Assembly: GCA_009103225.1 (NCBI GenBank)
Contig: RHPI01003728.1
Span: 69,719 to 133,718 of the forward strand
Length of the DNA: 64,000 nucleotides
Direction: 5' to 3'
Origin: Chlorokybus atmophyticus
Lineage: Eukaryota; Plantae; Mesostigma and Chlorokybus algae
Shown: one piece after another, positions 2,440-16,600 of the stretch
Numbering within the stretch: position 1 is the stretch's first letter
How the letters are laid out: every line of letters starts with the position of its first letter
The notes under the pieces: generated by a model
Told to the model about the DNA's origin: nothing
Database searches by the model: none
The model's input: the letters and a program-made list of their open reading frames with translations, nothing else
Position numbers and translations under genes: made by a program

Positions 2440-5400
2440 TCAGTGAGGAGGAAGAGGCGTCGGGAAGGAGTTCAGAGCGTAGTTGGGAACAACCCCCCAC
2501 ATCATGTAAATGTTGTCTGCGGTAGCAAGAGTTGTTAGAGACACGGCAGCAAGGGCAGTCACGGTAGCAATCAATGACATGCAGACATAGACTCACCATT
2601 GAAGTCAAAATTGCCGCCAGTATAGTCCATGTATGCATACACTGCCTGAGGCACGATCTGGCGCTGCCAATCCCTGACCGGGAAGTACCTAAAGAATTTG
2701 CCACAGTAGGGAATGGTGGTGCACCCTTGCCAATCCACTGCCCCAGTTGTGGAGTTCGTAAGGAGCTGGATCATCAGTGTCGCATTGGTGAATACCGTGT
2801 ACTTAGTCTGCAAGCATCTCAATGTCAGCAACCACCAGTTCATGAAACCAGGCATCCGACTAAGTGATTGCAGTGCGGCAAAGTGCCATGCTCCTACATG
2901 TACCTGCAGTCCAAAAGGGTCCGTGGGGTTAATCACATTATCAAGCGGGTACAAGGCACCGGTATTAACATTGTTGCCATACGGAAGCAGGCTCTGCGTC
3001 CTGTCAGGCTTCTGGAACCAGCTCACAGGGAAGTTACGAACCACTGTTGGCGGGCTTTTGGATGGCGCATACCCAGCAGGTGTCCAGCGCGTGAAGTCAT
3101 TGCCGGTGCAGCACTGTTGTACAAGACAAGTTAGTGGCTGCACAAGTGAGCTTACGACAACTGAACCAGGACCCCTGTCGCTGTACGAGTTTGTGTTCTT
3201 GTCTATATTTAAGATATACATCAAGCAGGCATAGGTGCTGGTACCGTGTGAAATGCTGCAATCTGTTTCACGCGAACGGAACCAGTAGTCGAATTGAAGT
3301 ACTCAACCAGGAATTCTTCTCCGGACGCAAAGTATCCACTGCAGCAGATTGTGCATCAGCCACTATCGTCCATATACGTTGCACGCGACACAGTGAACAA
3401 ACAGCCTTCAGACAAACGGTAGGCAGGACTTACGCATGGCCGTTCTCTGGCGTCCCGAATTTGCCAACAGGAACGTCATCTGTGTAGAACTTCGTCGTTA
3501 TGCCGAACACCCAGGCTATCTCAACGGAGGAAGGCTCGGAGTAGTAGAACCTGGAGCATACAATACAGACTTCTCAACAACTTTGTACTGGTGCAGCCAT
3601 TGGCACAGAAAGCAATGTGAGACATGTACCTGCTGGGGTACTGAGGCCTCACGCAATACTCTCCCGTTTGCTGCCACAGACCCCTCAACACGATGGTGCT
3701 GTAAGGACCGCCGTTGACCTAAGGATGAGGTGCACAGTGAGAAAGCATGGTATGCACCTGTCAACAGTGGCGGCGCAAGTTGGCTGGCCGCCTCACCCGG
3801 ATGCTGAGAGTTCCGTTCGACTGTCCAGTCAGCCGCACGCAGTTGATATCGGTCACACCATCAGTGTAACGGATAGTGACTGTAGCAACTCCACCAGCGG
3901 GAATGGTAAAATCTTCAGGAGTCAGGAGGTCCCACGGACCAGCAAGTTCGACATGGATGGTCACAGGATTGACTGTTGCATACAAAACCAAATGAGGATG
4001 TGCATGCATGCTTGCGAGAACTGCTGCTGTAATGCTGGCGGGTCTCAAGCACACCTGTGGGATTGCTGATGGTCACGTCGGACATGTTGTGTGTGTCATG
4101 GTTGTGGTAGTTGGCCTGGAAGTTATTCTGCAGGCGCGAGTGCGCAATCCAGCCATCATCCATGACCTTCTCCGTCGAGTTGATGGAGATCGCCACTGTG
4201 CAACCGGCAGCAGGTGCCGCACCAGCGGGCACACAGCAAGGACAAACCTGCAGAAGCAGTCACGTGTCAAGTCAAAGCAATAACACCCGTGAGTTTCAGC
4301 AGACGCGCGTTAAGCTGTCTTGTATACCTCGCGGATGGAGAATAGGGTAAAGGGCACGGACAGCGCAGCACCAGTGCCCTTCGAGGCAAAAATGCCAGCA
4401 AAGGTGACAACATTGCCCGGGGTGGAGCCCGCCCACCATGTTGCGCCAGTTGCATCCAGAGACCCCGCTGATGTGGCGGCAGACGGGGAGGTTGTCCAAA
4501 ACCTGTAAGGGGTGGGAAGTTGCGTCAATGTACTCATTAACACCTTCACACATGATGTCTCTCTGACATGACAGTGTCCATGTCGTGGTTACTAGCATCC
4601 AGTGATACCTGCCGGATACTCGCTGCAAATAGGGGTCCAGTGTCAGCTCCACATTAAAGCCATTCACGAGTCCGCCAGGCAGTGGGATATTGTTGGTCTT
4701 GCCCTCCGCGATGCTCCCAGCTGACTCAACCTGAAGACAAGTATTGGTTGTTACATCACTGCTGTACTGATGTATTGCAAGGTGCTCCACACAGTCTAGT
4801 GTGTAGATACTGTATAAATACTTACCACCAGCCGCAGGAACTGCGAAGTCGCAGTGTTCACAACAGACAGCTGCACATAGTTGTCTTGGTCGCTACCAAC
4901 CCACAGGCCCGCCTGCAAATGACGTACCATTAGCAGAGGGAAGAACACCATAATGCACGTGTTGTGTAGGCATGTAGGTCCCATACCTGTCCGCTAGGGC
5001 CATCCGGAAACGAGGCAACCGCAGCTCTCACCACCAAAGGAGCGAGGAACGGTGCAACACCGATACCCATCATATTGTCAGCGTCGTTGGACCTGGATCA
5101 GAAGACACCATCAGCGATCATACATGGGCAAGGGCAACAAGGTTTTGCCATTGCAGCTTTTTGCTTACCCCGCAGCATCGCCGGCAGTGGCGGCAACCGT
5201 CAATGTAGCTGCATTCCTGTTCATTGTCAATAGGCTCGGCTTGTAGCTGCCATCGCCAGCAACGCCTGGTGCGACGTGGGTGAAGCCGGTGCCCAATCCG
5301 TTCGTGTCCTCAACTGCAGTCGGCACGACACGTGAGCACAAGTCACTTTACTTGACGGGCAACCAGGGGGTGCAGCAACACCTACCAAGGAAGGACTCGT

Positions 5401-6954
5401 TGCGCGACCAGTCATATGCTGTGGGAATTGGCACAATCACTGGGAAGCCACAGGAGATTGGGGCATCAGCATTGGTAGGACGGCATGGGTTTAGAGCCGG
5501 AGGCGGGGGAGGCGGGGGAGGCTGTGGAAGATTCAATGTGGTCAGAAAACCTCCCATTGATGCCTCCAGACAACATTGGCTACACCTGCAAAACTTACCG
5601 CCAACGCCGCAGTTCCAGTGGCATAGAAGTTCTTGAATTTGTACATGACAGTGCCAGCTGGCGCTGGGTCACGAGACTGCGTTGCGTAAATGCCACCTGC
5701 AATTTCATGCAACAGATCAGGAGGAGCGACACACACCGTCAAACACCATCCTCACATGCCAGATGCATGTGAGCCAGTCCAAATGTAGCTGCAGGTGAAG
5801 TGAGATGTGAACTGGTAGAAAGCATCAGAATGTTTACGCACCATAAGCCCAAGTGGCTCCAGTCTGCGCACTGGGATCCCAGAGTCCTGCTGGGACGCCA
5901 ACAGGGGGGAAAGAATTGGAGCGCCCATCATCGGTGGACCAGCTGCCACTGATGGTGCTGGCGTCGGGATTGACAACCAGGTTCAGAGTGATTGTTGCGC
6001 TTGCCAATGAACCGCCTGTCACCGTCGTCACCGTTTGGGCCACCGTCACACCTCCAACCTCAGCCAGAATCTGAGAGAAGTGGTCAATGATATGAGTGCC
6101 GATTGTCTTCACGTTGGTGATGCACAGCACATGAAAGCCTTGATGACTTGCAGACACGATATCCTGAATGGATATCAGTACCTGTACTCGGTAGCCAATG
6201 GTTGGCCATGAGACAACAATCAGCTTGGCGAAGTTGTCTTCGTTGAGACCAAACCAAACACCGGCCTGATCGTACGCTTTGCCATACAGCCCCGGTTGCT
6301 CAACCGCTGTTGACAATGTCACTGGTCCAACCGGTCTTGCCAAAGCATAGCCCAATTTGTTGGTCTGCAGACATGCAAGACATAAGGTGTTCCATGTAGC
6401 ATGGGACAACCATTAGGTGCGCATCAGTTTGCGGTTCCGCATCAACAACTTTGCTTGTAAAGATGGCTACCTGGTTGTTCTTGGCAGCGTCGTCTATGCC
6501 ACTGGTGCAGGTGATGCTCAGCCTGCCATAGGCAACCTTCAGATTTGCGGGGACATAACCACCGCCAGGCTGGCTGGATGTCTGTACATAGGTGAAACCT
6601 AGTGTAAAATTGTTCCTGTCCACAGTCTGCACGAAGAAAGAACAGAACAACTGTATCAGAGAACTCATTCCCACAGACAGTTTGACAAAAAAATTGCCAC
6701 CCGTAAAAGAGACCTAATGAGACACTTTGGAGTGCACGTATGCACAAGTGGGCAAGATGCCCATGAAGACCCAAGGCTTGCACACTAACCTTTCCACCTC
6801 TCGGGCTGTACCAGTTGGGTACGCCAATGCTGTACGGCACCAGAACCGGTCCGCACGCGGGACTGGGGTTTGCCTCCGGTGGGCAGGGTGACTGCGCAGC
6901 CGCTAGCGCAATGCAGCACAGAGTCACAGCCAATATCACCACCCGCCCCACCAT
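2440..6954 (-). CDS. Large secreted modular protein: signal peptide, two lectin/ConA-like repeats separated by a Pro linker, Ig-like (choice-of-anchor-D-like) segment and a bacterial-type C-terminal domain
   Basis: ATG at 6954 starts MVGRVVILAVTLCCIALAAAQ (signal peptide). More than 10 exons with GT-AG sites. Repeat 1: LGFTYVQ...QAGVWFGLNEDNFAKL. Repeat 2: GTGFTHVAP...QAGLWVGSDQDNYVQL. Then FTIPAGGVATVTIRY, SVRVKQIAAFHT and RYFPVRDW...MDYTGGNFDFN-DNIYMM. Stop TGA at 2442-2440. Confidence 0.8.
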
Positions 6955-8084
6955 TGCTGCCAGCAAATCTTGATGCAGCCTACCAATATCACCGCATCAC
7001 AACCAGGATCACCCAACCTGCGCATGCACCATGTGACGAGTCTCAGCTTTCGTACATGCCTACAAGCACAGCTAGATCGAAAGCAAATGCAAGTCACAGA
7101 TGCTTGACTGGTATGCTACCGAAGACATGAATATGTGACACGCAACGTGCCTCTGTTTCCCTGACGTCACATCTATATTGAAGCGTCGCCAGCCAAGCCA
7201 CGGTGAAACCAACATGTGCGTGTCCTAACTGCCCACTCCTAGTATTGGACCAAGTTGTACTGGGGACTGAGAGCATGCTGTGGATTGCTAAATGTGACAT
7301 ATCATGCAGTTCCGTTCAGGAGTATGCGCGGGAAAAGCAGTGGCGACCTGACACACTGATGACGCCACCATGCAGTCAACCGGCAGAGAGCGACGGACAG
7401 CATTAGGCGTGTGTCACGCAATGCAAGTTGAGCTTACCGTGCTTGACACCCTGATGCGCTGGTCTGCGCTTGACCCCTCTCCTAACACCGCAAAGCAGGC
7501 GCCACGAACCAGTTGCAAGACCCCGACAAGGTTCAACACTCGCACACTAACGCAGTCGCACTCAAACTCACAGTTTCACAAACACACGCAGCCTGACTCT
7601 ACTAGCTTGGTATGCGCCCCTGCACTCAATATGCTCTCGGCCGCAGCGCTTATGCTCCTCCTCTGTCGCACCTCCGACGTTGGCGGAGACTGCGGCGGCA
7701 GCAGAGGCGGCTCTGTCACGATCGGCCGCCGCCGCCGCGTCCACTGCCACACCACTGCGCACGGATTGCTTTGTTGTGACGCTCAAGGCTGTATAATGAA
7801 GGCTTGTTGTTCGCGAAAGGATCCACGGTCACCCTTCAGTCAAGTGGTGGCTAGTGACTCTGGTCATCCGGCTGTAAAAGCTGACCGTGGTCAATGACCC
7901 TCGTGGATCGCCTGAGCTCGGCCGGTTAGGGTTTGTGCCTCCGGTTCTGGCGGGTAAGCGATGCGATGCGTTTGTAGTCAATCTCAGGCCGAAGACAGCT
8001 TTTCGCGCGGTCCGCGGCTTACTACACGTGGGCTGTGCTGGGGTTTCTCATGAGTGGCAAATCGTTCAGATCGTCAACTCGCAT

Positions 8085-8270
8085 GCATGCGCGACGTCTG
8101 GCTTCATGAAAGGCAGACGTGACCTTGCAGTTGACAGTGCAAAAGTCATGTTGTCAATGCAAAGGGCAAGAAGGGGCCATCTGGGGCTGCATGCGCGACG
8201 TCTTTTATTACGTCACTGCAGTTAACGTGCAAAAGTCATGTTGTCGAATGCAGAGGGCAAGAAGGGCTGC
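8085..8270. repeat. Imperfect direct tandem repeat, period about 104 bp
   Basis: Two copies of gcatgcgcgacgtct...tgcagtt(g/a)ac(a)gtgcaaaagtcatgttgtc(g)aatgca(a/g)agggcaagaaggg, starting at 8085 and 8189. Confidence 0.85.
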
Positions 8271-8899
8271 AATAAGTGCAGTTGCGTGTGTTGCATAACA
8301 CGTGGTCGAGTCGAGGACGCACGCGGAGCCTTGTCAATGCAGTCTGTCATGCAAGGTCAACCGCACGCGCCGTTGCTGGCACAAGCACGCGTCAGGTCAC
8401 GCCACGGGCTAGCAGTGCGAACTGCTAGGCCGTGGCGGCCACGGCGTGGCGTGACCTGCGACTTTGCACAGTTTCTCTGTTTAGTAAAAAGGCTGGCGGC
8501 TCAAAAGTCAAGCATTGAGCAAGCCCACAACAGCTGGAAAGCGAGCTGCGCAATCAATCAACGATGCAGATAGAGATGCTGCGCGTGCTTTTGCGCCAAA
8601 GAGTGTGAGCGTTCACCGTGCTGGCGTGTGTACCGATCTCGCAGGTACTGTTTCCAGCCTGTCTGCTGCGGATTGACATGTTGGAGCAGAACAGATGGAG
8701 CAGAGTGCTGTTGATACCATACATATAGTATGTACCATTGAGAGTCATGCAAGGCAAGCGAGGCAGCACAATTTAACAGCAGAACAATTGAACTTACAAC
8801 TTAACTCACAGCAAGAACAACCTAATTGTGTGGCTGGATTATTTCACGTACATGCAGTACGTTGCGGACAATGTCAAACTCGACCATGCGCTTAAGAGG

Positions 8900-11800
8900 C
8901 GCCTAGCCAATATCTAAGCAGAGCAGCGCATATGATGAATGACTTTAAATACGCAATTAAATAATTAATATTCATATGAGGTAAACATATATTGATGTTT
9001 ACCCGTGCATGGTGCACCCTGTAAAGTATCGTGCATATCGAAAGTGATTTGTAGTGATTGCATTGGGGGAGGGGGAGGGGGCATCTTAGCGGAAGAGGGG
9101 CATTGCATTAAGTCAAAAACACTTATATTAATGAAATGAAATACGTGTCGTAATCAAATAGATATGTGACAAAACTATAAATGAACCGTAAAACAAAACT
9201 TAATGACCATAATGTGATCAAACCGTAAATGAAGTATACGACTATGATTAACGACCGTAATTATATTCGTATAATCTATGATAATCGCACAGCAAGCGTC
9301 AAGGGGCATGGTATAAAAGGAGGGGGCATAATAAATTCTACAATATGCCCTTTGAAGTTATAAGGGGAAACTATGTTCTAATTGCATGCAGTGTATTACT
9401 ATCACATATGGTAGGGCGCACTCTGAAACAATAAAATCGTATGTATGCGGATATCTGTAAGTGTGCAGTTGGCGCTTAGCTACTAAGTCATAGCAGCAAT
9501 GTATGCGGATATCTGTAAGTGTGCAATTGGCGCTTAGCTACTAAGTCATAGCAGCAAAAATGGCTGCCATATGACGACCACATGCCAATAATACATGTTG
9601 AATAAGCATATACATGACTTTAAGCCTTTAGACCGTTTACAATTACAAGCCCCCATGTCAGTTGAGCGGTCATGTTATTGCATGAGTTATGTATATGCCA
9701 GTATACACACATAACAGGTGTGCATTACTATCTCACACCTGTAGCATAATATGCTGTTACCATTAACCTTTATAACAGTTAAATGTAAGGCTATCAACTG
9801 TAATAGCCCTTTTGAACGAGTGGTGTGAGAACCTCCATACCATAAAAGTGGAGGGCTTATACAAAAAGAGGGGGCTTAACTTATATTTGGGTATCGACCA
9901 ACAATGAATATGACAACCCTTTCATGTATCATATCAAATTTATAGCGGAAACAAAAGGTTTAAAACGGCCACTTGCAATTGCAAACGATGAAATTGTAAC
10001 GTCCATATGGGGCGTCGAGCATTAAACTGTGCACTTGTAAACATATGTTGAATATTGAGTGCATGCATTTGCTGTTGGTTTGCATACACGTGATGTGAAG
10101 GGAGAAAGCCAAACTCCCCCTAAAATCCTCTACCTCAACACCCAAGCTAACGCCCCTACCCACGCCGCCGCCGTAGCTGTCTTGGTCAAGAAGTCCCGTC
10201 CCCACCACTTACGACAAGCCATGGCTTTGACCAGTCTGGCTGATATGAACTAGACAGGGTAACTGTCGTCGATATCGCCTGTAGGGACTAATAACCAAAA
10301 AGAGACTCCTATAAGAGTCTTAATGAGCATAGAGCGAGGAACCAATTGAGCTTGGCATATGATTGACCTATTAAGGTCATATACAATGATGTTAAGGTGA
10401 AAACCTCAAATAAGGGACAAGCCCTTGACACATGATAAATGTACAAGGCATGATGAGAAAATTAAAAATTGACGATGTACATTTATCTCTAAACTTATCT
10501 CTACATCCCTAGTGCTAGTGTAAAATTACGCTGATGTTGGCGTCGTATAAATGTTTATGTTAATAAAGTCAACGTGGAAGCATGCATCATACATTAAACT
10601 TAATGTATTAGGCTGAGACATTTTTAATACGTATACCACATACATATGCAAGACTTACACCGCAGCATTTAAGATATGTTGATTGTACAAATGTAAGTAA
10701 GATGTCACATTGTATTAGCTAATTTATGTGGTGTTTAACCACGCCCCGCAATAAAGCCTTCAACATTAAGTATACATGTTGCTTATGTCACTTGCAACAT
10801 ATCATTATTTTACATTAACTTAAGTTTAATCATGATTGATATTAATGTCATCAATGGCATTTGATTTGTAGCATGATCAGCTATATTCGCCATAACAACG
10901 TGAGTACCAAACAGCACAAATCTCAGGGACTGCAACACATTAACCACATAGGTCGGTATCGCTCAGTCGGCAAGGCCCCATCTTACATGCGCTCATCAGG
11001 CTATGAGTGTGACAGCCGTAGCCCGCTTTGGGTTGGTGCAATGCAAGTGGCTCTTGCGGGGTGCAGAAGCTAGAAGGTGCGACCCGCAAAAGCTTGGGGG
11101 AGAGCAAACGAGTAGAACAGAGAACATATGTATGCAATGCAGCTTTTTATCGGCCACAAATTAATTTCTTGGCACGTGTGTCCGACATGCGTTAAATATA
11201 CAACTAGCATGCAAGTTTTTGAAAAATGAACGCATATCCATGTTGCCAAACGGTAAAACTTTTCCAATCCTTGCAATTTGCCGGTGCCAGAGACATTACC
11301 GTCATCATGCTTAATTTTTCGTAATGTACAAGCGTGTAGCGATATGTGGATGCGAAGGCAGGTAATGATATACATGTATATGTAACAATCCGCAACGATA
11401 ATTCTTGTTGCCTTAGGTCATGGTTAAAGTCTTCAGCTATTTGAAGCTATAAAGCAATGGTAAAAAAGGTTATGAATTGTGCGCATGTCTGTGCCCTTTG
11501 TTTGACATGTTGTGCTTTTTGTACCAAACTGGGCAGCAAGTCAACTGCTTTTGGCATATGCTGATGGTGATCGGATGTATATTGATCAGTATTAAGCATG
11601 GTTACATTTGTACATTACAATGTGGTTGTCAATTCAACATTGGTATCGCTAATTGTGGAATAAAATTATTATTCTCATTGCTAAAAATAACATTTGTTGA
11701 AACGAATTTCTATTCACAACCGATAGCACCCATCAACTTGAGTGCATGTGGTGCTGTTGCATCTATTTGCAAGCAGTATCCTTTTGAAAAACATGCATTG

Positions 11801-11900
11801 ATGCATATGCATGTGGCGCATCGCATGTCATCAATGTTAGCATTATGCTAATGCGGCTTATCATAATAGCAATTAGTGCCATATTTGTTAATGTGATAAC
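8900..11900. other. AT-rich, gene-free island; probably old transposon-derived DNA
   Basis: Composition shifts visibly to A/T runs compared with the flanks. No recognisable protein. Contains a tandem duplication and short hairpins. Confidence 0.55.
9441..9556. repeat. 58-bp tandem duplication (2 copies, 1 mismatch)
   Basis: atgtatgcggatatctgtaagtgtgca(g/a)ttggcgcttagctactaagtcatagcagca at 9441-9498 and 9499-9556. Confidence 0.95.
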
Positions 11901-12583
11901 ACATCATGTCAACGCACCGTGTATACATAGTCACAAATGTAAGTCATACCCTGCAATTCCTTGATTGGCAGCTCAGCCCTCCCAAGGTACAGCGCCAGTC
12001 ACATGGAAGCTCCAATAGGAACTCCCACGACTTTCGCATTGTGTTAGTACCAACGTACACCCTCTCCGAGAGAGATTGCCGCTGTTTGCGTGGCGTTCCC
12101 CGCGCGTTGGTCAGAACTCCAGGCTCAGCAGTGGCATCGTCCTTCAGGCGGGCGGCGGCTGCATGCGCGTTGTCGACGCGCGAGGAGCTGCGGACAGCTG
12201 GAGTTGCATAAGGAGGAGAGAGCATGCTGCAGAGGATAGCAAGGCATGGCAGATGCCGTGTTACAGTTGACATGCTACAAATCTCATCTGTTGAGGATTG
12301 GTTGTTTGCTGCCAGTCGGCAGAATGGCAGGGTTGGTTGTCATGCTGTTTGTTTCATATCCTTGCGTCAAGCATGCTCGCAGTGCTGTGTACTTGGGTTA
12401 TCAACAGGCCCTACGCTTAGAGTTTACGAGGCTTTGGTATGTGGGTTGTCCACTGGCTCGCTCGATGATTCCAAACAATCTGCTTGCGCCTCCGACAGCA
12501 TGCAAGGTTTCTGAATAACAAGTTGGGGTTTACCATGTGAACATAGTAAGACACTGTGTTGCATGCAGTTGAGATCGTGAGCC

Positions 12584-15500
12584 ATGCTGGCTCAAGCCCT
12601 GCTGCGCGTCGGCGGCCGCGCAGCAGCGGCCGCCTCCCGACGCCGCTGCTTTCACAGCGATTACATCCGCAATAACCACTTCCAGAGCGCTGGAGCAGGA
12701 ATCAAAAACTGCCAAGCAGCAGCCGCAAGCGTCTCGTCACAGTGAGCTTAACTTTGTCCCTTACACTGATGTCATGTGCATAGATTGGCGTGACACACAC
12801 ATTTATTGTGTAACTCACCAGTGCTTCTAAACACAGCAACGAGTACACCGGAAGCTATCATCTGCCCCTGGCGCTATGGCTCGCTGCAGCAGCTGCAGCG
12901 TGTGGTTCAAGTGGAGTTGCAAGAGCAGAGGTGCCAGCTGCTAAGGCGACAACAGTCATAGAAGAGCACCATCCTCCCCCTGGGTTCGTAGAGGAATTGA
13001 CGCAAGCACTTGGGGTACTGTCTCCTTTCTCCTCATCCTGTCTGCTTGCGCATGTGCTTACACTTCAATTGCACGCGTGTGTTCAAAGTGTGCTTAAGCG
13101 CGAATGGGTGTTCATCTGTGCATGGGTCTATCTGCAGTGCACCATTAATTTGAAATCGCTGCTACAGAATGAGAAGGTGGTCACAGACCCGAGCGAATTG
13201 GAACTGCACGGCAAGCCATGGAACAGTTATCACAAAGTGCTGAGCATGCCAGATGCTGTTGTGTACCCAACGTACGCACATGCATGTCACTTGGTTGCAA
13301 TGAGTGTACATATGGATGCACAAGCTCATCTGTGTTCTGCACGCAGTTGCACAGAAGATGTCGTGGCAGTGGTGAAGTTGTGCAACAAGTACAAAATGCC
13401 AATTGTCCCATATGGCGGTGCGACATCACTAGAGGGTCACACGCTCGCGCCATGCGGTGGCGTCACCATCGACTTCACCAACATGAAGGCCATCAAGGTC
13501 CTGAACGAGGAGGACCTGGACATCACCGTGCAAGCGGGCATGGGCTGGGTTGAGCTGAACGAAATACTGGCTGAGAAAGGGCTTTTCTTTCCCCTTGACC
13601 CAGGTCAGTGCAGGCTCCAATCCTGCATGCATACAATCAGCATGGGGTGACGCAAGCGCATGGCACAGACACACAGATGCATGCACGCACACGTCACATG
13701 CACACATAACAGGCTTTCTCTACTTCCAGGTCCAGGAGCGACAGTTGGCGGGATGGTTGCGTGTGGCTGTTCCGGTTCACTGGCAGTCAGGTGCGCACGT
13801 TGATAGCTGCCTTTGTAAGCTTGTTTTTTCGGCTGACTCACGCATCATTTGACACCGCGTGTGGAGCTGATGGTTGTTATTCAGGTACGGAACAATGAAG
13901 GACAACGTCCTGCGAATACAGGCAAGTATTGCAAAGCACTGTTACATATGCCTAACTGTAACTGGCCATTGTTACAGTGGTTACCTGGTCTACGCTTCTT
14001 CTGGTTCCACTCCAGTCAGCTCATGTGAGTACATGTTGCAAATGCGCAGGGTGTGCTTCCTTCTGGGGAGGTGATGTCAACAGGTGGCCGTCCACGCAAG
14101 TCCGCTGCGGGGTATGACTTGGTCCGCATCATCACGGGCTCAGAGGGGACGCTGTGTGTGGTTACGGAGGTGACACTGAAGCTGCAGCGCATCCCACCGT
14201 ACACCGCCGTCGCCAGCGCTACCTTCAACGGCATCCATGATGCGGCGAAGACTGCAAGCGATACATTGCATGCAGGCGTGCCCGTAAGTGCAAACATTGT
14301 TCATCTTGTGCATGTGGGCTCAAAAGCTTGAGCTGATGTGTTGGGTTTCGTGGCACGATAGCTTGGCCGGTGCGAAATGATGGATGAGGTGATGATGCGC
14401 GCCGTTAACGAGGCTAACAGCCGCAACATGCCGGAGAAAGTGACTCTGCTTTACGAGTTTGTCGGCACACCCGCCTCCGTCGAGGAACAAGTAAGACATG
14501 GCCTGCCTTGTCGTATCCGTCTAGTTTTCTGTTGTCTCACCCTGTTATGTTGTACCCCCCATGTACTAGGTTAGGTTAGCTGAGGAGATTGCCAAGCAGA
14601 ATGGATCTGGTGACTTTGTGTTTACCTCTGACGAAGAGGAGAAGCACAAGCTGTGGCAGGTGCGTGTGTGTTTGGCGCTGCATTGCACACTACAAGGGCC
14701 TTTGTTGCAAGCCAATGAGGGTGGGTTGGCTCTCTGTGTCAGGCACGCAAAGAGGCTCTGTGGTCAGCAGCGGTGTTGAATCCGGATGCTGAGGTCATGA
14801 TTACGGTGAGTTCGTATGCAATGCGTGTAGGTATTAGTATCGCTTATAGCAGTACAAGGGAATCCGCAATGGTCACCATTCTGTATATACCCTGCAGGAC
14901 GTCTGTGTGCCGCTTTCGAAGTTGGCAGATCTCATCACAGAGACAAAGGTGAGAATATGGCCGTCTTGGGGCTGTGTGTGTGGACTTTGTCACAATGTTG
15001 CGCCATGTGTTGTGATCCTAACCAGGCATTGTCTGGACTTTGCAGGAAGAGTTGAAGAAGTCATGGCTGGTTGCGCCCATTGTTGCTCATGCTGGCGACG
15101 GCAACTTCCATGTTTTCATCATGTTTGATCCCGACAACCCTAAAGATATCCAAGAAGCGCTGAGGCTCAACAAGAATATGGTGACTATAAGCGCATGGGC
15201 GAATGGCATTGCATTCTCCTTACACACAAGTACAATCGACTAGTGGACCACGGTGGTGATTGTGTGCTAATTGTCAATTAGGTGAAAAGGGCAATCTCAA
15301 TGGAGGGTACGTGCACGGGCGAGCACGGGGTGGGCGTGGGCAAAATCGCCTATCTGAACGATGAGATTGGGCCTGGAGGGTTGAAGATGATGGAGTTGAT
15401 AAAGCGAGGCATTGACCCGGACAATATTATGAACCCGGTACGCTTTGGTTGGGTTTGGCAAAAATGCACACTATGCATGCGTAGAGCGATCAAGTCCTGT

Positions 15501-15669
15501 CCTACATTGTGGTCAGATACTGGCTTACTGGCTGCGTGGCAAGACTTGATGTTGCAAGTGCGTTCCCTTGGGGTCGTCAGTCTGCTGCTTGCATGCTTCA
15601 CTGCCGCTTACTGCTGGTTAATTTTGCCTGATGCAGGGCAAAGTTGTGCGGCTGGAAGGATGCAGATGA
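12584..15669 (+). CDS. DLD: Mitochondrial D-lactate dehydrogenase (cytochrome), FAD-linked oxidase type 4
   Basis: Transit-like MLAQALLRVGGRAAAAASRRR. Motifs: PDAVVYP, IVPYGGATSLEGH, FFPLDPG-PGATVGGM, YGTMKDNVL, GGRPRKSAAGYDL..GSEGTL, DVCVPLSKL, AHAGDGNFH, GTCTGEHGVGVGK, IDPDNIMNP-GKV. About 13 exons. Stop at 15667-15669. Confidence 0.95.
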
Positions 15670-16600
15670 GGACAACCCACGTCTAACACAAACACGCGTT
15701 GCGCAGTATCTTACTTTATGTGACATGACGAATACATACAGGATTGTGCTTAGCTTGTTGGGTTGTTTCTGTTCTTAGGGTGGGTGGCGTGCACAGGCAT
15801 GGGCTGCTGCAGCTTGGTTGGCAATCCCTACCCGACACCACTCGACTGTTGCCAATACGCTGAAGGCATCAGCCTGAGCTGGTGTGTACTGTGTATGAGA
15901 GGACGTGCTAGTTGATGCTGCTGGCCAGCGGCGGTTGTACAGTGGCTGGTGTGGTGGAGTTGTGATGGTCTTAGGATTGGTACGGACATTGTTGGGGGCT
16001 TGTGGATCACATTGTTGTTGATTAGATGTTGGTTGCATGTAAGCTATAGAGGTTCTGATGCAGGCCCCGTTGTCAAATCTTGAGCTTCAAGATATGCGCG
16101 GTGTACCCTAGCTGTAGCATGGTTACTGTCACAGAATTTTCAGGTGTGCACGCCCAAATGACTTCTTGTACACAAGCGCCCTAGTCCATCAGGCATGCTG
16201 TTATAGGCGACGCAAGTAAAGACATCGGAATAAGTTTTGCAAAAGGTGTATCCAGCACAGTTTATTGCCCAATTGGAGCAACACAGGACCAGCCCGTATC
16301 CCTTGCTTGTCGACAACTTTTTGAAGCACCCCAGGCTATAGCACCAAACCACATGAGCAATGCCTTGGGCATGAGTAGCTTCTCCTTGTGCCCTTTTGTA
16401 CAAAAGGGGTGTGCTACGATGTGTAAATGTGCATACTCACAAAGCGAGTCAATGAGTAGGTGCCTGCCGTGTCAAACTGCATGATTGTGCACGAATGATG
16501 CCGCACGTCAAGCATAGCGACTCAAGGCAGCCAGCAACACACACTTGTGCATGTGAGAACAAGCAAGACGGCAGGACACGCAAGCTCAACACAGCGAGCG

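What the first reader, a model, noticed from the sequence alone, without database searches (positions are those of the whole stretch)
2440..6954. Intron-rich secreted protein with a bacterial surface-protein architecture (candidate domesticated HGT)
Seen: a signal peptide; two homologous modules, each with a C..PV.VP segment, GFT.V and QAG.W.G...DN...L, joined by a poly-Pro linker; an Ig-like segment; and a C-terminal block VRVKQIAAFH...QSLLP...RYFPVRD...MDY..GNFDFNDNIY. From memory, this motif set and order occur in large bacterial extracellular malectin/PKD/choice-of-anchor-D proteins and not in land-plant proteins. Inference: an old bacteria-to-alga transfer that gained more than 10 introns and now acts as a wall or mucilage lectin or adhesin. 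The C-terminal domain has no established function.
Basis: partly seen in the sequence, partly recalled or inferred. Interest (0 to 1): 0.75.

Follow-up and report, generated by a model that had tools for sequence, protein, structure and literature searches.

The report
Algal secreted lectin gene of bacterial origin
The alga Chlorokybus has an intact 19-exon gene for a secreted protein made of domains otherwise found here only in bacteria, and its unnamed end domain looks like the calcium-dependent sugar-binding lectin LecB, so a gene captured from bacteria is the likeliest origin.

Summary
On the minus strand, 6954..2443, lies a 19-exon, 18-intron (all GT-AG) gene. Its 922-aa product is identical to the public Chlorokybus atmophyticus model Chrsp119S01758.

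Layout:
- a signal peptide;
- two homologous ConA-like modules of the GH43_C2/DUF1349 kind, not malectin, joined by eight prolines;
- an ASH/HYDIN-type Ig domain;
- a roughly 230-aa C-terminal domain with no Pfam model.

Residues 297-908 align colinearly with the C-terminal 600 aa of Trueperaceae proteins. HMMs built only from bacterial sequences hit every part (94-145 bits). About 200 relatives were found. All named ones are bacterial, from at least eight phyla.

A high-confidence model of the unnamed domain (pLDDT 93) matches only PA-IIL/LecB-type two-calcium lectins (Z 6.0-7.5, next family 5.0 or less). The family's near-invariant N-x-D-x-N-D falls on LecB calcium ligands 99, 101, 103 and 104, and the alga keeps it.

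The best reading is an old bacterium-to-alga transfer that now gives a secreted multivalent glycan binder. The donor is unresolved because the algal branch is very long. Absence from other eukaryotes was tested only weakly. The scan already noted a probable paralogue elsewhere in this genome (s1-079061).

The parts
2440..6954 (-). Whole gene. The 19 exons are 6954..6790, 6626..6471, 6364..6182, 6070..5842, 5696..5599, 5521..5386, 5313..5169, 5092..4987, 4912..4826, 4730..4609, 4502..4328, 4247..4055, 3972..3797, 3718..3630, 3550..3434, 3338..3245, 3113..2904, 2807..2597 and 2516..2443. The stop codon is 2442..2440.
   Evidence: Splice junctions were found by frame continuity and GT-AG. The 2766-nt CDS gives 922 aa with no internal stop. 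It is identical to public protein P0001 of Chlorokybus atmophyticus.
6892..6954 (-). Signal peptide, aa 1-21.
   Evidence: Read directly from the translation: a basic n-region, a hydrophobic core and a small-residue AAA|Q site. No signal-peptide predictor was available.
5599..6885 (-). ConA-like module 1, aa about 24-277, exons 1-5.
   Evidence: A bacteria-only module HMM hits aa 50-269 at 145.4 bits. The Pfam match to DUF1349 is below threshold. BLASTP shows 31% identity to the N-terminal module of bacterial P0003.
5498..5521 (-). Linker of eight prolines, aa 278-285.
   Evidence: Translation.
4328..5497 (-). ConA-like module 2, aa about 286-534, exons 6-11.
   Evidence: It is homologous to module 1. 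The bacteria-only module HMM hits aa 305-532 at 94.3 bits. The Pfam match to GH43_C2 is below threshold.
3665..4247 (-). Cys-rich linker plus ASH/HYDIN/PapD-type Ig-like domain, aa 535 to about 675, exons 12-14.
   Evidence: The bacteria-only Ig+lectin HMM aligns from aa 586. The equivalent bacterial domain models as a beta-sandwich that matches CEP192 ASH and HYDIN PapD-like domains (Z 8.6-6.8). It hits Pfam PF22544 in bacterial relatives.
2479..3664 (-). C-terminal PA-IIL/LecB-like domain, aa about 676-910, exons 14-19. It is followed by a 12-aa tail.
   Evidence: The bacteria-only domain HMM hits aa 691-908 at 93.1 bits. The AlphaFold model of the bacterial homologue has pLDDT 92.6. The top 15 structural matches are all PA-IIL family lectins, Z 6.0-7.5.
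2512..2627 (-). Putative calcium and sugar loop, D888-Y889...N893-x-D895-x-N897-D898-N899. It is coded in 2627..2597 and 2516..2512. The codon of D898 is split by the last intron.
   Evidence: These columns are invariant or nearly so in alignments A2, A4 and A6. They are in register with LecB ligands D99, D101, N103 and D104.

Best explanation
This is a real nuclear gene of Chlorokybus atmophyticus for a secreted protein of 922 aa. All four folded parts belong to bacterial extracellular-protein domain families: two ConA-like beta-sandwich modules, an ASH/HYDIN-type Ig domain, and a C-terminal domain that is a distant, unnamed branch of the PA-IIL (LecB)/DUF4114 calcium-dependent lectins.

The cassette module-Ig-lectin most likely entered the Chlorokybus lineage from a bacterium long ago. 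It then gained a signal peptide and 18 spliceosomal introns, duplicated the module, and diverged strongly.

Inferred mechanism: after secretion, the C-terminal domain holds calcium in its N-x-D-x-N-D loop and binds sugar hydroxyls through the metal, as LecB does. The two ConA-like modules add further glycan-binding sites. The protein would then act as a multivalent binder or cross-linker of polysaccharides in the alga's mucilage or wall, or of microbial surface glycans.

Shown here: the gene model, the domain homologies, the bacterial distribution, the fold match and the conserved loop. Inferred: the direction of transfer, calcium binding, sugar binding and the biological role.
For: Gene:
- 19 exons and 18 GT-AG introns. 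The product is identical to the public model.
- A neighbouring gene at 12.9-15.7 kb also has introns and encodes an FAD-linked oxidase. GC content is even across the window.

Homology to bacteria:
- tblastn aligns aa 297-908 colinearly with Trueperaceae ORF L001:2153-5806 (E 1.6e-32; alignment).
- Bacteria-only HMMs give 145.4 and 94.3 bits for the modules, 124.5 bits for Ig+lectin and 93.1 bits for the lectin domain alone.

Distribution:
- 121 confirmed module loci in GTDB species genomes of Deinococcota, Chloroflexota, Thermomicrobiota, Actinomycetota, Pseudomonadota, Myxococcota, Planctomycetota and Bacteroidota.
- 95 metagenome loci, all as uninterrupted ORFs.
- 180 database proteins. Every named one is bacterial, including Deinococcus, Solirubrobacteraceae, Nostoc, Tepidisphaeraceae and Verrucomicrobiota.
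- The nearest Atlas clusters are 100% Bacteria.
- No other eukaryotic protein appeared.

Module fold: 28 of 58 bacterial modules hit GH43_C2.

Lectin domain:
- AlphaFold pLDDT is 94.0 and 92.6.
- VIA-wide puts PA-IIL at Z 7.2 (108 of 114 residues aligned) and thrombocorticin at 6.4. The next family scores 5.0 or less.
- The second look gives 15 of 15 top rows to the PA-IIL family. The Foldseek top hits are the same family.
- The offset of the structural alignment puts near-invariant N179, D181, N183 and D184 on LecB D99, D101, N103 and D104, which are calcium ligands (PMC8752737).
- One bacterial subfamily has the exact LecB spacing E-D-x-x-N-x-D-x-Q-D. Exactly those members give weak DUF4114 hits on that stretch.
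- DUF4114 is tied to PA-IIL-type lectins (PMC9109919). It is the experimentally shown mannose-binding domain of an Acanthamoeba protein (PMC11934332).
Against: - Structural Z scores of 6-7.5 lie in the range the tool warns may reflect only a common arrangement. Foldseek E-values are about 0.01, and TM-scores normalised to the target are about 0.45-0.5.
- No significant sequence match exists to Pfam PA-IIL (PF07472) or to any PDB chain. The DUF4114 hits are below threshold at 13-15 bits.
- LecB residues E95 and D96 are not in register in the main family or in the alga.
- The model is of a bacterial homologue, not of the algal domain, which carries insertions.
- On the trees the algal sequences sit on very long branches (2.35 changes per site against a median of 0.44) with no supported bacterial sister. 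A lone eukaryote can always be read as an outgroup.
- The searches that saw no other eukaryote also missed the bacterial relatives until profiles were used. Absence from eukaryotes is therefore weakly tested.
- Expression was not checked here.
Confidence: 0.6

Rival explanations
1. The C-terminal domain shares only a generic beta-sandwich with LecB. It is not a sugar binder but, for example, a calcium-dependent lipid-binding or protein-binding domain of the C2 kind, or a purely structural domain. The protein would then be a scaffold whose ligands come only from the ConA-like modules, or it would have another role altogether.
For: - Z scores are middling, and C2 domains come next in the list at Z 4-5.
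- No significant sequence link exists to PA-IIL.
- LecB E95 and D96 are out of register.
Against: - All 15 top rows belong to one family and cover 94-97% of each lectin chain, with a gap before the next family.
- Four calcium-ligand positions coincide with the family's most conserved columns.
- In bacteria the domain sits between other carbohydrate-binding domains: malectin, NPCBM and ConA-like.
Confidence: 0.22
2. The gene is an old eukaryotic gene inherited vertically and lost or unrecognisably diverged in nearly all other eukaryotes. The bacterial families are then either distant cousins or the recipients.
For: - The algal sequence is at most 33-38% identical to any bacterial one and sits on a very long branch with no supported sister.
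- Eukaryotes were searched only with single-sequence or word-based methods.
- The genome is reported to hold at least one more gene with such modules (s1-079061).
Against: - About 200 relatives span at least eight bacterial phyla. Among eukaryotes only Chlorokybus has been seen so far.
- Bacterial sequences from different phyla are far closer to one another (45-70% identity) than to the alga.
- The three-domain order and the C-terminal end are shared with one bacterial architecture.
Confidence: 0.1
3. Bacterial contamination or a misassembled bacterial fragment in the algal assembly.
For: All of the domains are of bacterial type.
Against: - Eighteen spliceosomal GT-AG introns interrupt the reading frame. 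There is a eukaryotic signal peptide and a poly-proline linker.
- The gene lies in a 64-kb stretch of even composition beside intron-bearing eukaryotic genes.
- No bacterial sequence is closer than 38% identity.
Confidence: 0.01

Closest known systems
PA-IIL / LecB family of two-calcium fucose/mannose lectins (Pseudomonas LecB, Chromobacterium CV-IIL, Ralstonia RS-IIL, Burkholderia BclA and BC2L-C, sponge thrombocorticin), with the related Pfam DUF4114
   Same: - The beta-sandwich superposes on 107-111 of 113-116 lectin residues (Z 7.2-7.5).
- An acidic/amide loop just before the last strand has the same spacing as LecB calcium ligands 99, 101, 103 and 104.
- Both occur in extracellular proteins.
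   Different: - The domain is about 195-230 aa, against 114, with an extra N-terminal helix and strands.
- No significant sequence match exists to PF07472.
- LecB E95 and D96 are shifted by one residue.
- The domain is usually internal in giant proteins, so the neighbour's C-terminal carboxylate that completes the LecB site cannot be a general feature.
- Binding is untested.
Bacterial 'choice-of-anchor D' / 'malectin domain-containing carbohydrate-binding' proteins of Deinococcus, Trueperaceae, Solirubrobacteraceae and others
   Same: - They share the HYDIN-type Ig followed by the unnamed domain.
- In Trueperaceae a ConA-like module comes directly before, and the protein ends at the same point as the algal one.
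   Different: - The bacterial proteins have no introns, are often 1000 to more than 3600 aa long, and add malectin, NPCBM, Big_5, fn3, GSDH or Kelch domains.
- The alga has two modules, a poly-proline linker and a Cys-rich linker, and no malectin.
GH43_C2 / DUF1349 Concanavalin A-like domains
   Same: Bacterial homologues of the two algal modules pass the GH43_C2 threshold. The algal modules score just below it.
   Different: The modules are not attached to a GH43 catalytic domain. They form a distinct subfamily with a Cys-bearing N-terminal strand and the Q-A-G-x-W-F-G...D-N motif.
Other intron-bearing genes of bacterial origin in Chlorokybus noted by this scan (s1-079061, s1-079186, s1-190638)
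   Same: All show the same pattern of bacterial-type domains in an intron-rich secreted algal protein. From its description, s1-079061 looks like a paralogue, with four modules plus an unnamed C-terminal domain.
   Different: The locus and the module number differ.

Membership tests
PA-IIL (LecB) lectin family / DUF4114 superfamily | Nine-stranded antiparallel beta-sandwich of the PA-IIL type | tested here: met
   In models of the bacterial homologue (pLDDT 92.6-94), the top 15 VIA rows are all PA-IIL family, with Z 6.0-7.5, rmsd 3.1-4.5 and 102-112 residues aligned. The next family scores 5.0 or less. The Foldseek top hits are the same family at E about 0.01. The scores are moderate.
PA-IIL (LecB) lectin family / DUF4114 superfamily | Calcium-binding loop E95-D96-x-x-D99-x-D101-x-N103-D104 before the last strand | tested here: inconclusive
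   Positions 99, 101, 103 and 104 are matched by near-invariant N, D, N and D (P0001 N893, D895, N897, D898). E95 and D96 are out of register by one residue in the main family and in the alga. They are in register only in the L036/L076/L058/L069/L073 subfamily.
PA-IIL (LecB) lectin family / DUF4114 superfamily | Significant match to Pfam PF07472 or PF13448 | tested here: not met
   No PF07472 hit appears at E <= 1 for any of the 79 members or for P0001. DUF4114 is hit only at 13.5-15.5 bits (cut-off 27) in five members. The domain is therefore not filed as a member of these Pfam families, only as a probable distant relative.
PA-IIL (LecB) lectin family / DUF4114 superfamily | Calcium-dependent binding of fucose or mannose | not testable with these tools
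   This needs recombinant protein and a glycan array or ITC, with and without EDTA.
Malectin (PF11721) | Match to the malectin profile in the algal protein | tested here: not met
   P0001 and its exons give no malectin hit. Malectin is a separate domain downstream of the unnamed domain in bacterial relatives such as L086, L089 and L132.
Concanavalin A-like GH43_C2 / DUF1349 | Profile match above the Pfam threshold | tested here: inconclusive
   P0001 scores 19.1 bits on GH43_C2 (cut-off 22.7) and 19.4 bits on DUF1349 (cut-off 32.4). The bacterial homologue L001 scores 32.7 bits on GH43_C2, and 28 of 58 homologues match at E <= 0.01. The homologue HMM hits P0001 at 145.4 and 94.3 bits. Membership therefore holds by transitive homology.
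HYDIN/VesB/CFA65-like Ig (PF22544; 'choice-of-anchor D' relatives) | ASH/PapD-like Ig fold directly before the unnamed domain | tested here: met
   Bacterial relatives hit PF22544. The model scores Z 8.6 against the CEP192 ASH domain and 6.8-6.9 against HYDIN. P0001 aa 586 onward aligns to this part of the bacteria-only HMM. P0001 on its own gives no Pfam hit there.
Horizontally acquired gene (bacterium to eukaryote) | The gene is truly part of the eukaryotic genome | tested here: met
   There are 18 spliceosomal introns. The neighbouring gene has introns and the composition is even.
Horizontally acquired gene (bacterium to eukaryote) | Wide bacterial distribution and absence from other eukaryotes | tested here: inconclusive
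   The bacterial breadth is shown. No other eukaryote was seen, but those searches lacked profile sensitivity. The origin of the 141-aa fragment P0002 is unknown.
Horizontally acquired gene (bacterium to eukaryote) | Supported phylogenetic nesting inside a bacterial clade | tested here: inconclusive
   The algal end branch is 2.35 changes per site, and no branch with high support encloses it. The two modules pair with each other at 81% support, with a long-branch warning.

The most novel reading that the evidence does not exclude
The unnamed domain defines a large, so far unrecognised branch of the PA-IIL/LecB two-calcium lectins. It has hundreds of members in at least eight bacterial phyla, no Pfam model, and typically sits between a HYDIN-type Ig and a malectin domain. 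A streptophyte alga captured it, which would make this the first LecB-type lectin in the green plant lineage. It may shape the mucilage that holds Chlorokybus cell packets together, or it may recognise microbes.
Probability: 0.4. Interest if true: 0.6.

Novelty: new variant of a known kind. Interest (0 to 1): 0.5.

Why it matters
Genes taken from bacteria are thought to have helped streptophyte algae adapt to life on surfaces and on land. This is a clean, whole-cassette example with a traceable bacterial architecture.

The work also gives a testable function, calcium-dependent sugar binding, to a widespread bacterial surface-protein domain that has no name or family model. LecB-type lectins are studied as biofilm and adhesion factors. 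An algal version in an organism that lives in mucilage-bound cell packets suggests a comparable role in matrix cross-linking or in recognising microbes.

Tried and rejected
- **Single-exon and two-exon searches.** Pfam scans of single exons gave only two weak hints. Two-exon stop-free references gave nothing in Pfam or PDB.
- **Exhaustive phmmer search.** The search with the C-terminal block found only the protein itself and one 141-aa fragment. This first looked like 'no bacterial relatives' and turned out to be a sensitivity limit.
- **Word searches.** Those on P0001 found only two bacterial module proteins, and nothing for residues 655-922.
- **Other blanks.** The Atlas gave nothing for the C-terminal part. 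PDB sequence searches with P0001, with profiles A5, A6 and A7, and with a 60-aa motif piece found no lectin. NCBIfam gave nothing for P0001.
- **Missing DNA.** The contigs of P0002 and P0003 could not be fetched.
- **Literature.** No paper names this gene.
- **Handling of the spliced model.** Database searches used exon references or the public id P0001. The joined model was built only inside scripts from window.fa, for local comparisons.
- **Readings rejected.** Malectin identity of the modules was rejected because there was no hit. Contamination was rejected because of the introns.
Full report
**1. The observation**

The finding's span runs from a start codon at 6954 to a stop codon at 2442..2440 on the minus strand. 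A three-frame translation shows about 19 open coding pieces that switch frame.
- Requiring frame continuity and GT-AG gave one consistent chain of 19 exons and 18 introns of 72-163 nt. The CDS is 2766 nt, giving 922 aa with no internal stop.
- The two N-terminal modules align end to end. The Smith-Waterman score is 196, against 40 +/- 7 for shuffles.
- The window holds no second copy.

**2. Identity of the gene and genome**

An exhaustive phmmer search used the stop-free reference covering exons 17-18. It returned a 922-aa protein, P0001.
- P0001 is identical to my spliced model.
- It is EukProt EP00898, Chlorokybus atmophyticus, jgi/Chlat1/1346/Chrsp119S01758. This agrees with earlier notes on the genome.
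- From then on P0001 was used by id.
The joined model existed only inside scripts.

**3. First searches looked empty**

- Exon-wise Pfam scans gave only weak DUF1349 and Big_12 hints.
- The exhaustive search found, besides P0001, only a 141-aa metagenome fragment, P0002.
- Word searches found two bacterial-looking proteins that share the N-terminal module (P0003 and P0004). They found nothing for residues 655-922.
- P0001 itself scores just below threshold on DUF1349 and GH43_C2. It has no malectin hit.

**4. Bacterial relatives of the whole cassette**

A pattern scan of GTDB species genomes used the P0001+P0003 alignment. It gave 121 confirmed loci in many phyla.
- A local tblastn then showed that P0001 residues 297-908 align in one colinear HSP with a Trueperaceae ORF, L001:2153-5806 (1217 aa, E 1.6e-32). 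Similar matches occur in four more Trueperaceae genomes, one Chloroflexota genome and one Bacteroidia genome.
The invariant residues include Q797, P801, R867, P880, D888, Y889, N893, D895, N897, D898 and N899.
- A metagenome scan with a C-terminal alignment added 95 relatives. All are uninterrupted ORFs, mostly inside giant proteins of 500 to more than 3600 aa.
- HMMs built without the algal sequence hit P0001 strongly. The modules score 145.4 and 94.3 bits. Ig+lectin scores 124.5 bits, and the lectin domain alone 93.1 bits.
- The blank was therefore a sensitivity limit, not absence.

**5. What the bacterial proteins are**

- Pfam on ten complete ORFs shows a HYDIN/VesB/CFA65-type Ig directly before the unnamed domain. 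Malectin directly follows it in several. Big_5, fn3, NPCBM and DUF1573 occur elsewhere in these proteins.
- A word search with one of these proteins listed 180 proteins. All named ones are bacterial: Deinococcus, Solirubrobacteraceae, Nostoc, Tepidisphaeraceae, Verrucomicrobiota, Frankiales and Salinibacter. NCBI calls them 'choice-of-anchor D domain-containing' or 'malectin domain-containing carbohydrate-binding' proteins.
- The N-terminal module is ConA-like. 28 of 58 bacterial copies hit GH43_C2 and 9 hit DUF1349. The Atlas neighbours are bacterial clusters of the same kind.

**6. The unnamed C-terminal domain**

It has no Pfam, NCBIfam or PDB sequence match.

AlphaFold models of the Trueperaceae homologue, built with 79-80 aligned sequences, are confident:
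- Ig+domain: pLDDT 94.0, pTM 0.88.
- Domain alone: pLDDT 92.6, pTM 0.90.

The Ig part matches ASH/PapD-like domains of CEP192 and HYDIN (Z 8.6-6.8).

For the domain alone:
- An all-against-representatives structural search ranks Pseudomonas lectin II (PA-IIL/LecB) first, with Z 7.2, rmsd 3.3 and 108 of 114 residues aligned. Thrombocorticin is second at Z 6.4. C2 domains follow at 5.0 or less.
- The second look gives all 15 top rows to the PA-IIL family: CV-IIL 7.5, PA-IIL 7.4, BC2L-C 7.3, BclA 6.8 and RS-IIL 6.6. There is then a drop to 4.8.
- The Foldseek top hits are the same family at E about 0.01.
- The alignment ends at model residue 192 and lectin residue 112. This offset of 80 places the family's near-invariant N179, D181, N183 and D184 on LecB D99, D101, N103 and D104. 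Together with E95 these are the side-chain calcium ligands of LecB (PMC8752737).
- In the alga these are N893, D895, N897 and D898.
- One bacterial subfamily even has the full LecB spacing, E-D-x-x-N-x-D-x-Q-D. I predicted that the five weak DUF4114 hits seen among the members would be these sequences. They were, and the hits fall on the last 55 residues.
- DUF4114 has been linked to PA-IIL-type lectins and to a calcium pocket (PMC9109919). It is the experimentally shown mannose-binding domain of an Acanthamoeba adhesin (PMC11934332).

Limits:
- The Z scores are moderate.
- The sequence link is below threshold.
- LecB E95 and D96 are out of register in the alga.
- The model is of a bacterial homologue.

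**7. Origin**

- The gene is certainly algal. It has 18 introns, a eukaryotic signal peptide and poly-proline linker, and an intron-bearing FAD-linked oxidase gene nearby. Composition is even across the window.
- Trees of the Ig+lectin region and of the modules place the algal sequences on very long branches (2.35, 1.88 and 2.45 changes per site, against medians of about 0.4). They have no supported bacterial sister.
- The two algal modules pair with each other at 81% support, under a long-branch warning. This fits a duplication after acquisition.
- P0002 pairs with the alga at 94% support. Its organism is unknown.
- A single eukaryote can always be read as an outgroup on an unrooted tree. The case for bacterium-to-alga transfer therefore rests on two things. 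One is distribution: about 200 relatives in at least eight bacterial phyla against one eukaryote. The other is the shared three-domain order and C-terminal end with one bacterial architecture.
- Eukaryotes were not searched with profiles. This is the main gap.

**8. Function**

The best-supported reading is a secreted, multivalent glycan-binding protein. It would have two ConA-like modules and one calcium-dependent LecB-like domain held apart by proline-rich and Cys-rich linkers and an Ig spacer. It would bind or cross-link polysaccharides of the mucilage or wall, or microbial glycans. Retention of all family-invariant residues argues that the domain still works. Binding, ligand and location are inferred, not shown.

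**9. Prior notes**

The scan had already described, elsewhere in this genome, a secreted protein of four bacterial-type lectin-fold modules plus an unnamed bacterial-type C-terminal domain (s1-079061). It had also described ConA/DUF1349 modules fused to C-type lectins (s1-079186). These are probable relatives. I could not compare sequences. No paper naming this gene was found.

**10. Verdict**

The new element is the assignment of the 'function-less' domain to the PA-IIL/LecB lectin fold with a conserved metal loop. It is a solid but not surprising example of gene capture, so interest is moderate.

Noticed in passing
window 12931-15683 (+): A neighbouring intron-bearing gene for an FAD-linked oxidase. 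The FAD_binding_4 and FAD-oxidase_C domains lie on separate exons, as in D-lactate dehydrogenase or glycolate oxidase types.
   Followed up: partly
window 8001-12000: An AT-richer stretch (GC 0.40-0.44, against about 0.52 elsewhere) lies upstream of the gene. It includes a perfect-looking 58-bp tandem duplication at 9441-9557.
   Followed up: no
L001:5856-9020 and L045:6367-9951: In Trueperaceae the gene directly downstream of the colinear homologue encodes a Big_5 plus GSDH-like (sugar dehydrogenase propeller) protein. The pairing is conserved in two genomes. GSDH and Kelch propellers are also fused to the ConA-like module in P0003.
   Followed up: partly
L065 (whole locus, + strand): A Chloroflexota ORF of more than 3661 aa runs off both ends of the locus. 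It carries the LecB-like domain internally and at least three ConA-like modules downstream.
   Followed up: partly
L036, L076, L058, L069, L073, L046, L044 (about 7.0-9.4 kb in each locus): A Bacteroidota/Actinomycetota subfamily of the unnamed domain has the loop E-D-A-x-N-G-D-Y-Q-D, which is the exact spacing of the LecB calcium ligands. It is the bridge to DUF4114.
   Followed up: yes
P0002 (141 aa, 929-bp metagenome contig, JGI sample 3300059473): This is the closest relative of the algal C-terminal domain and shares its K-F-F-R-Y-F-P and G-N-F-D-F-N-D-N variants. It is uninterrupted where the alga has two introns. Its organism is unknown.
   Followed up: partly
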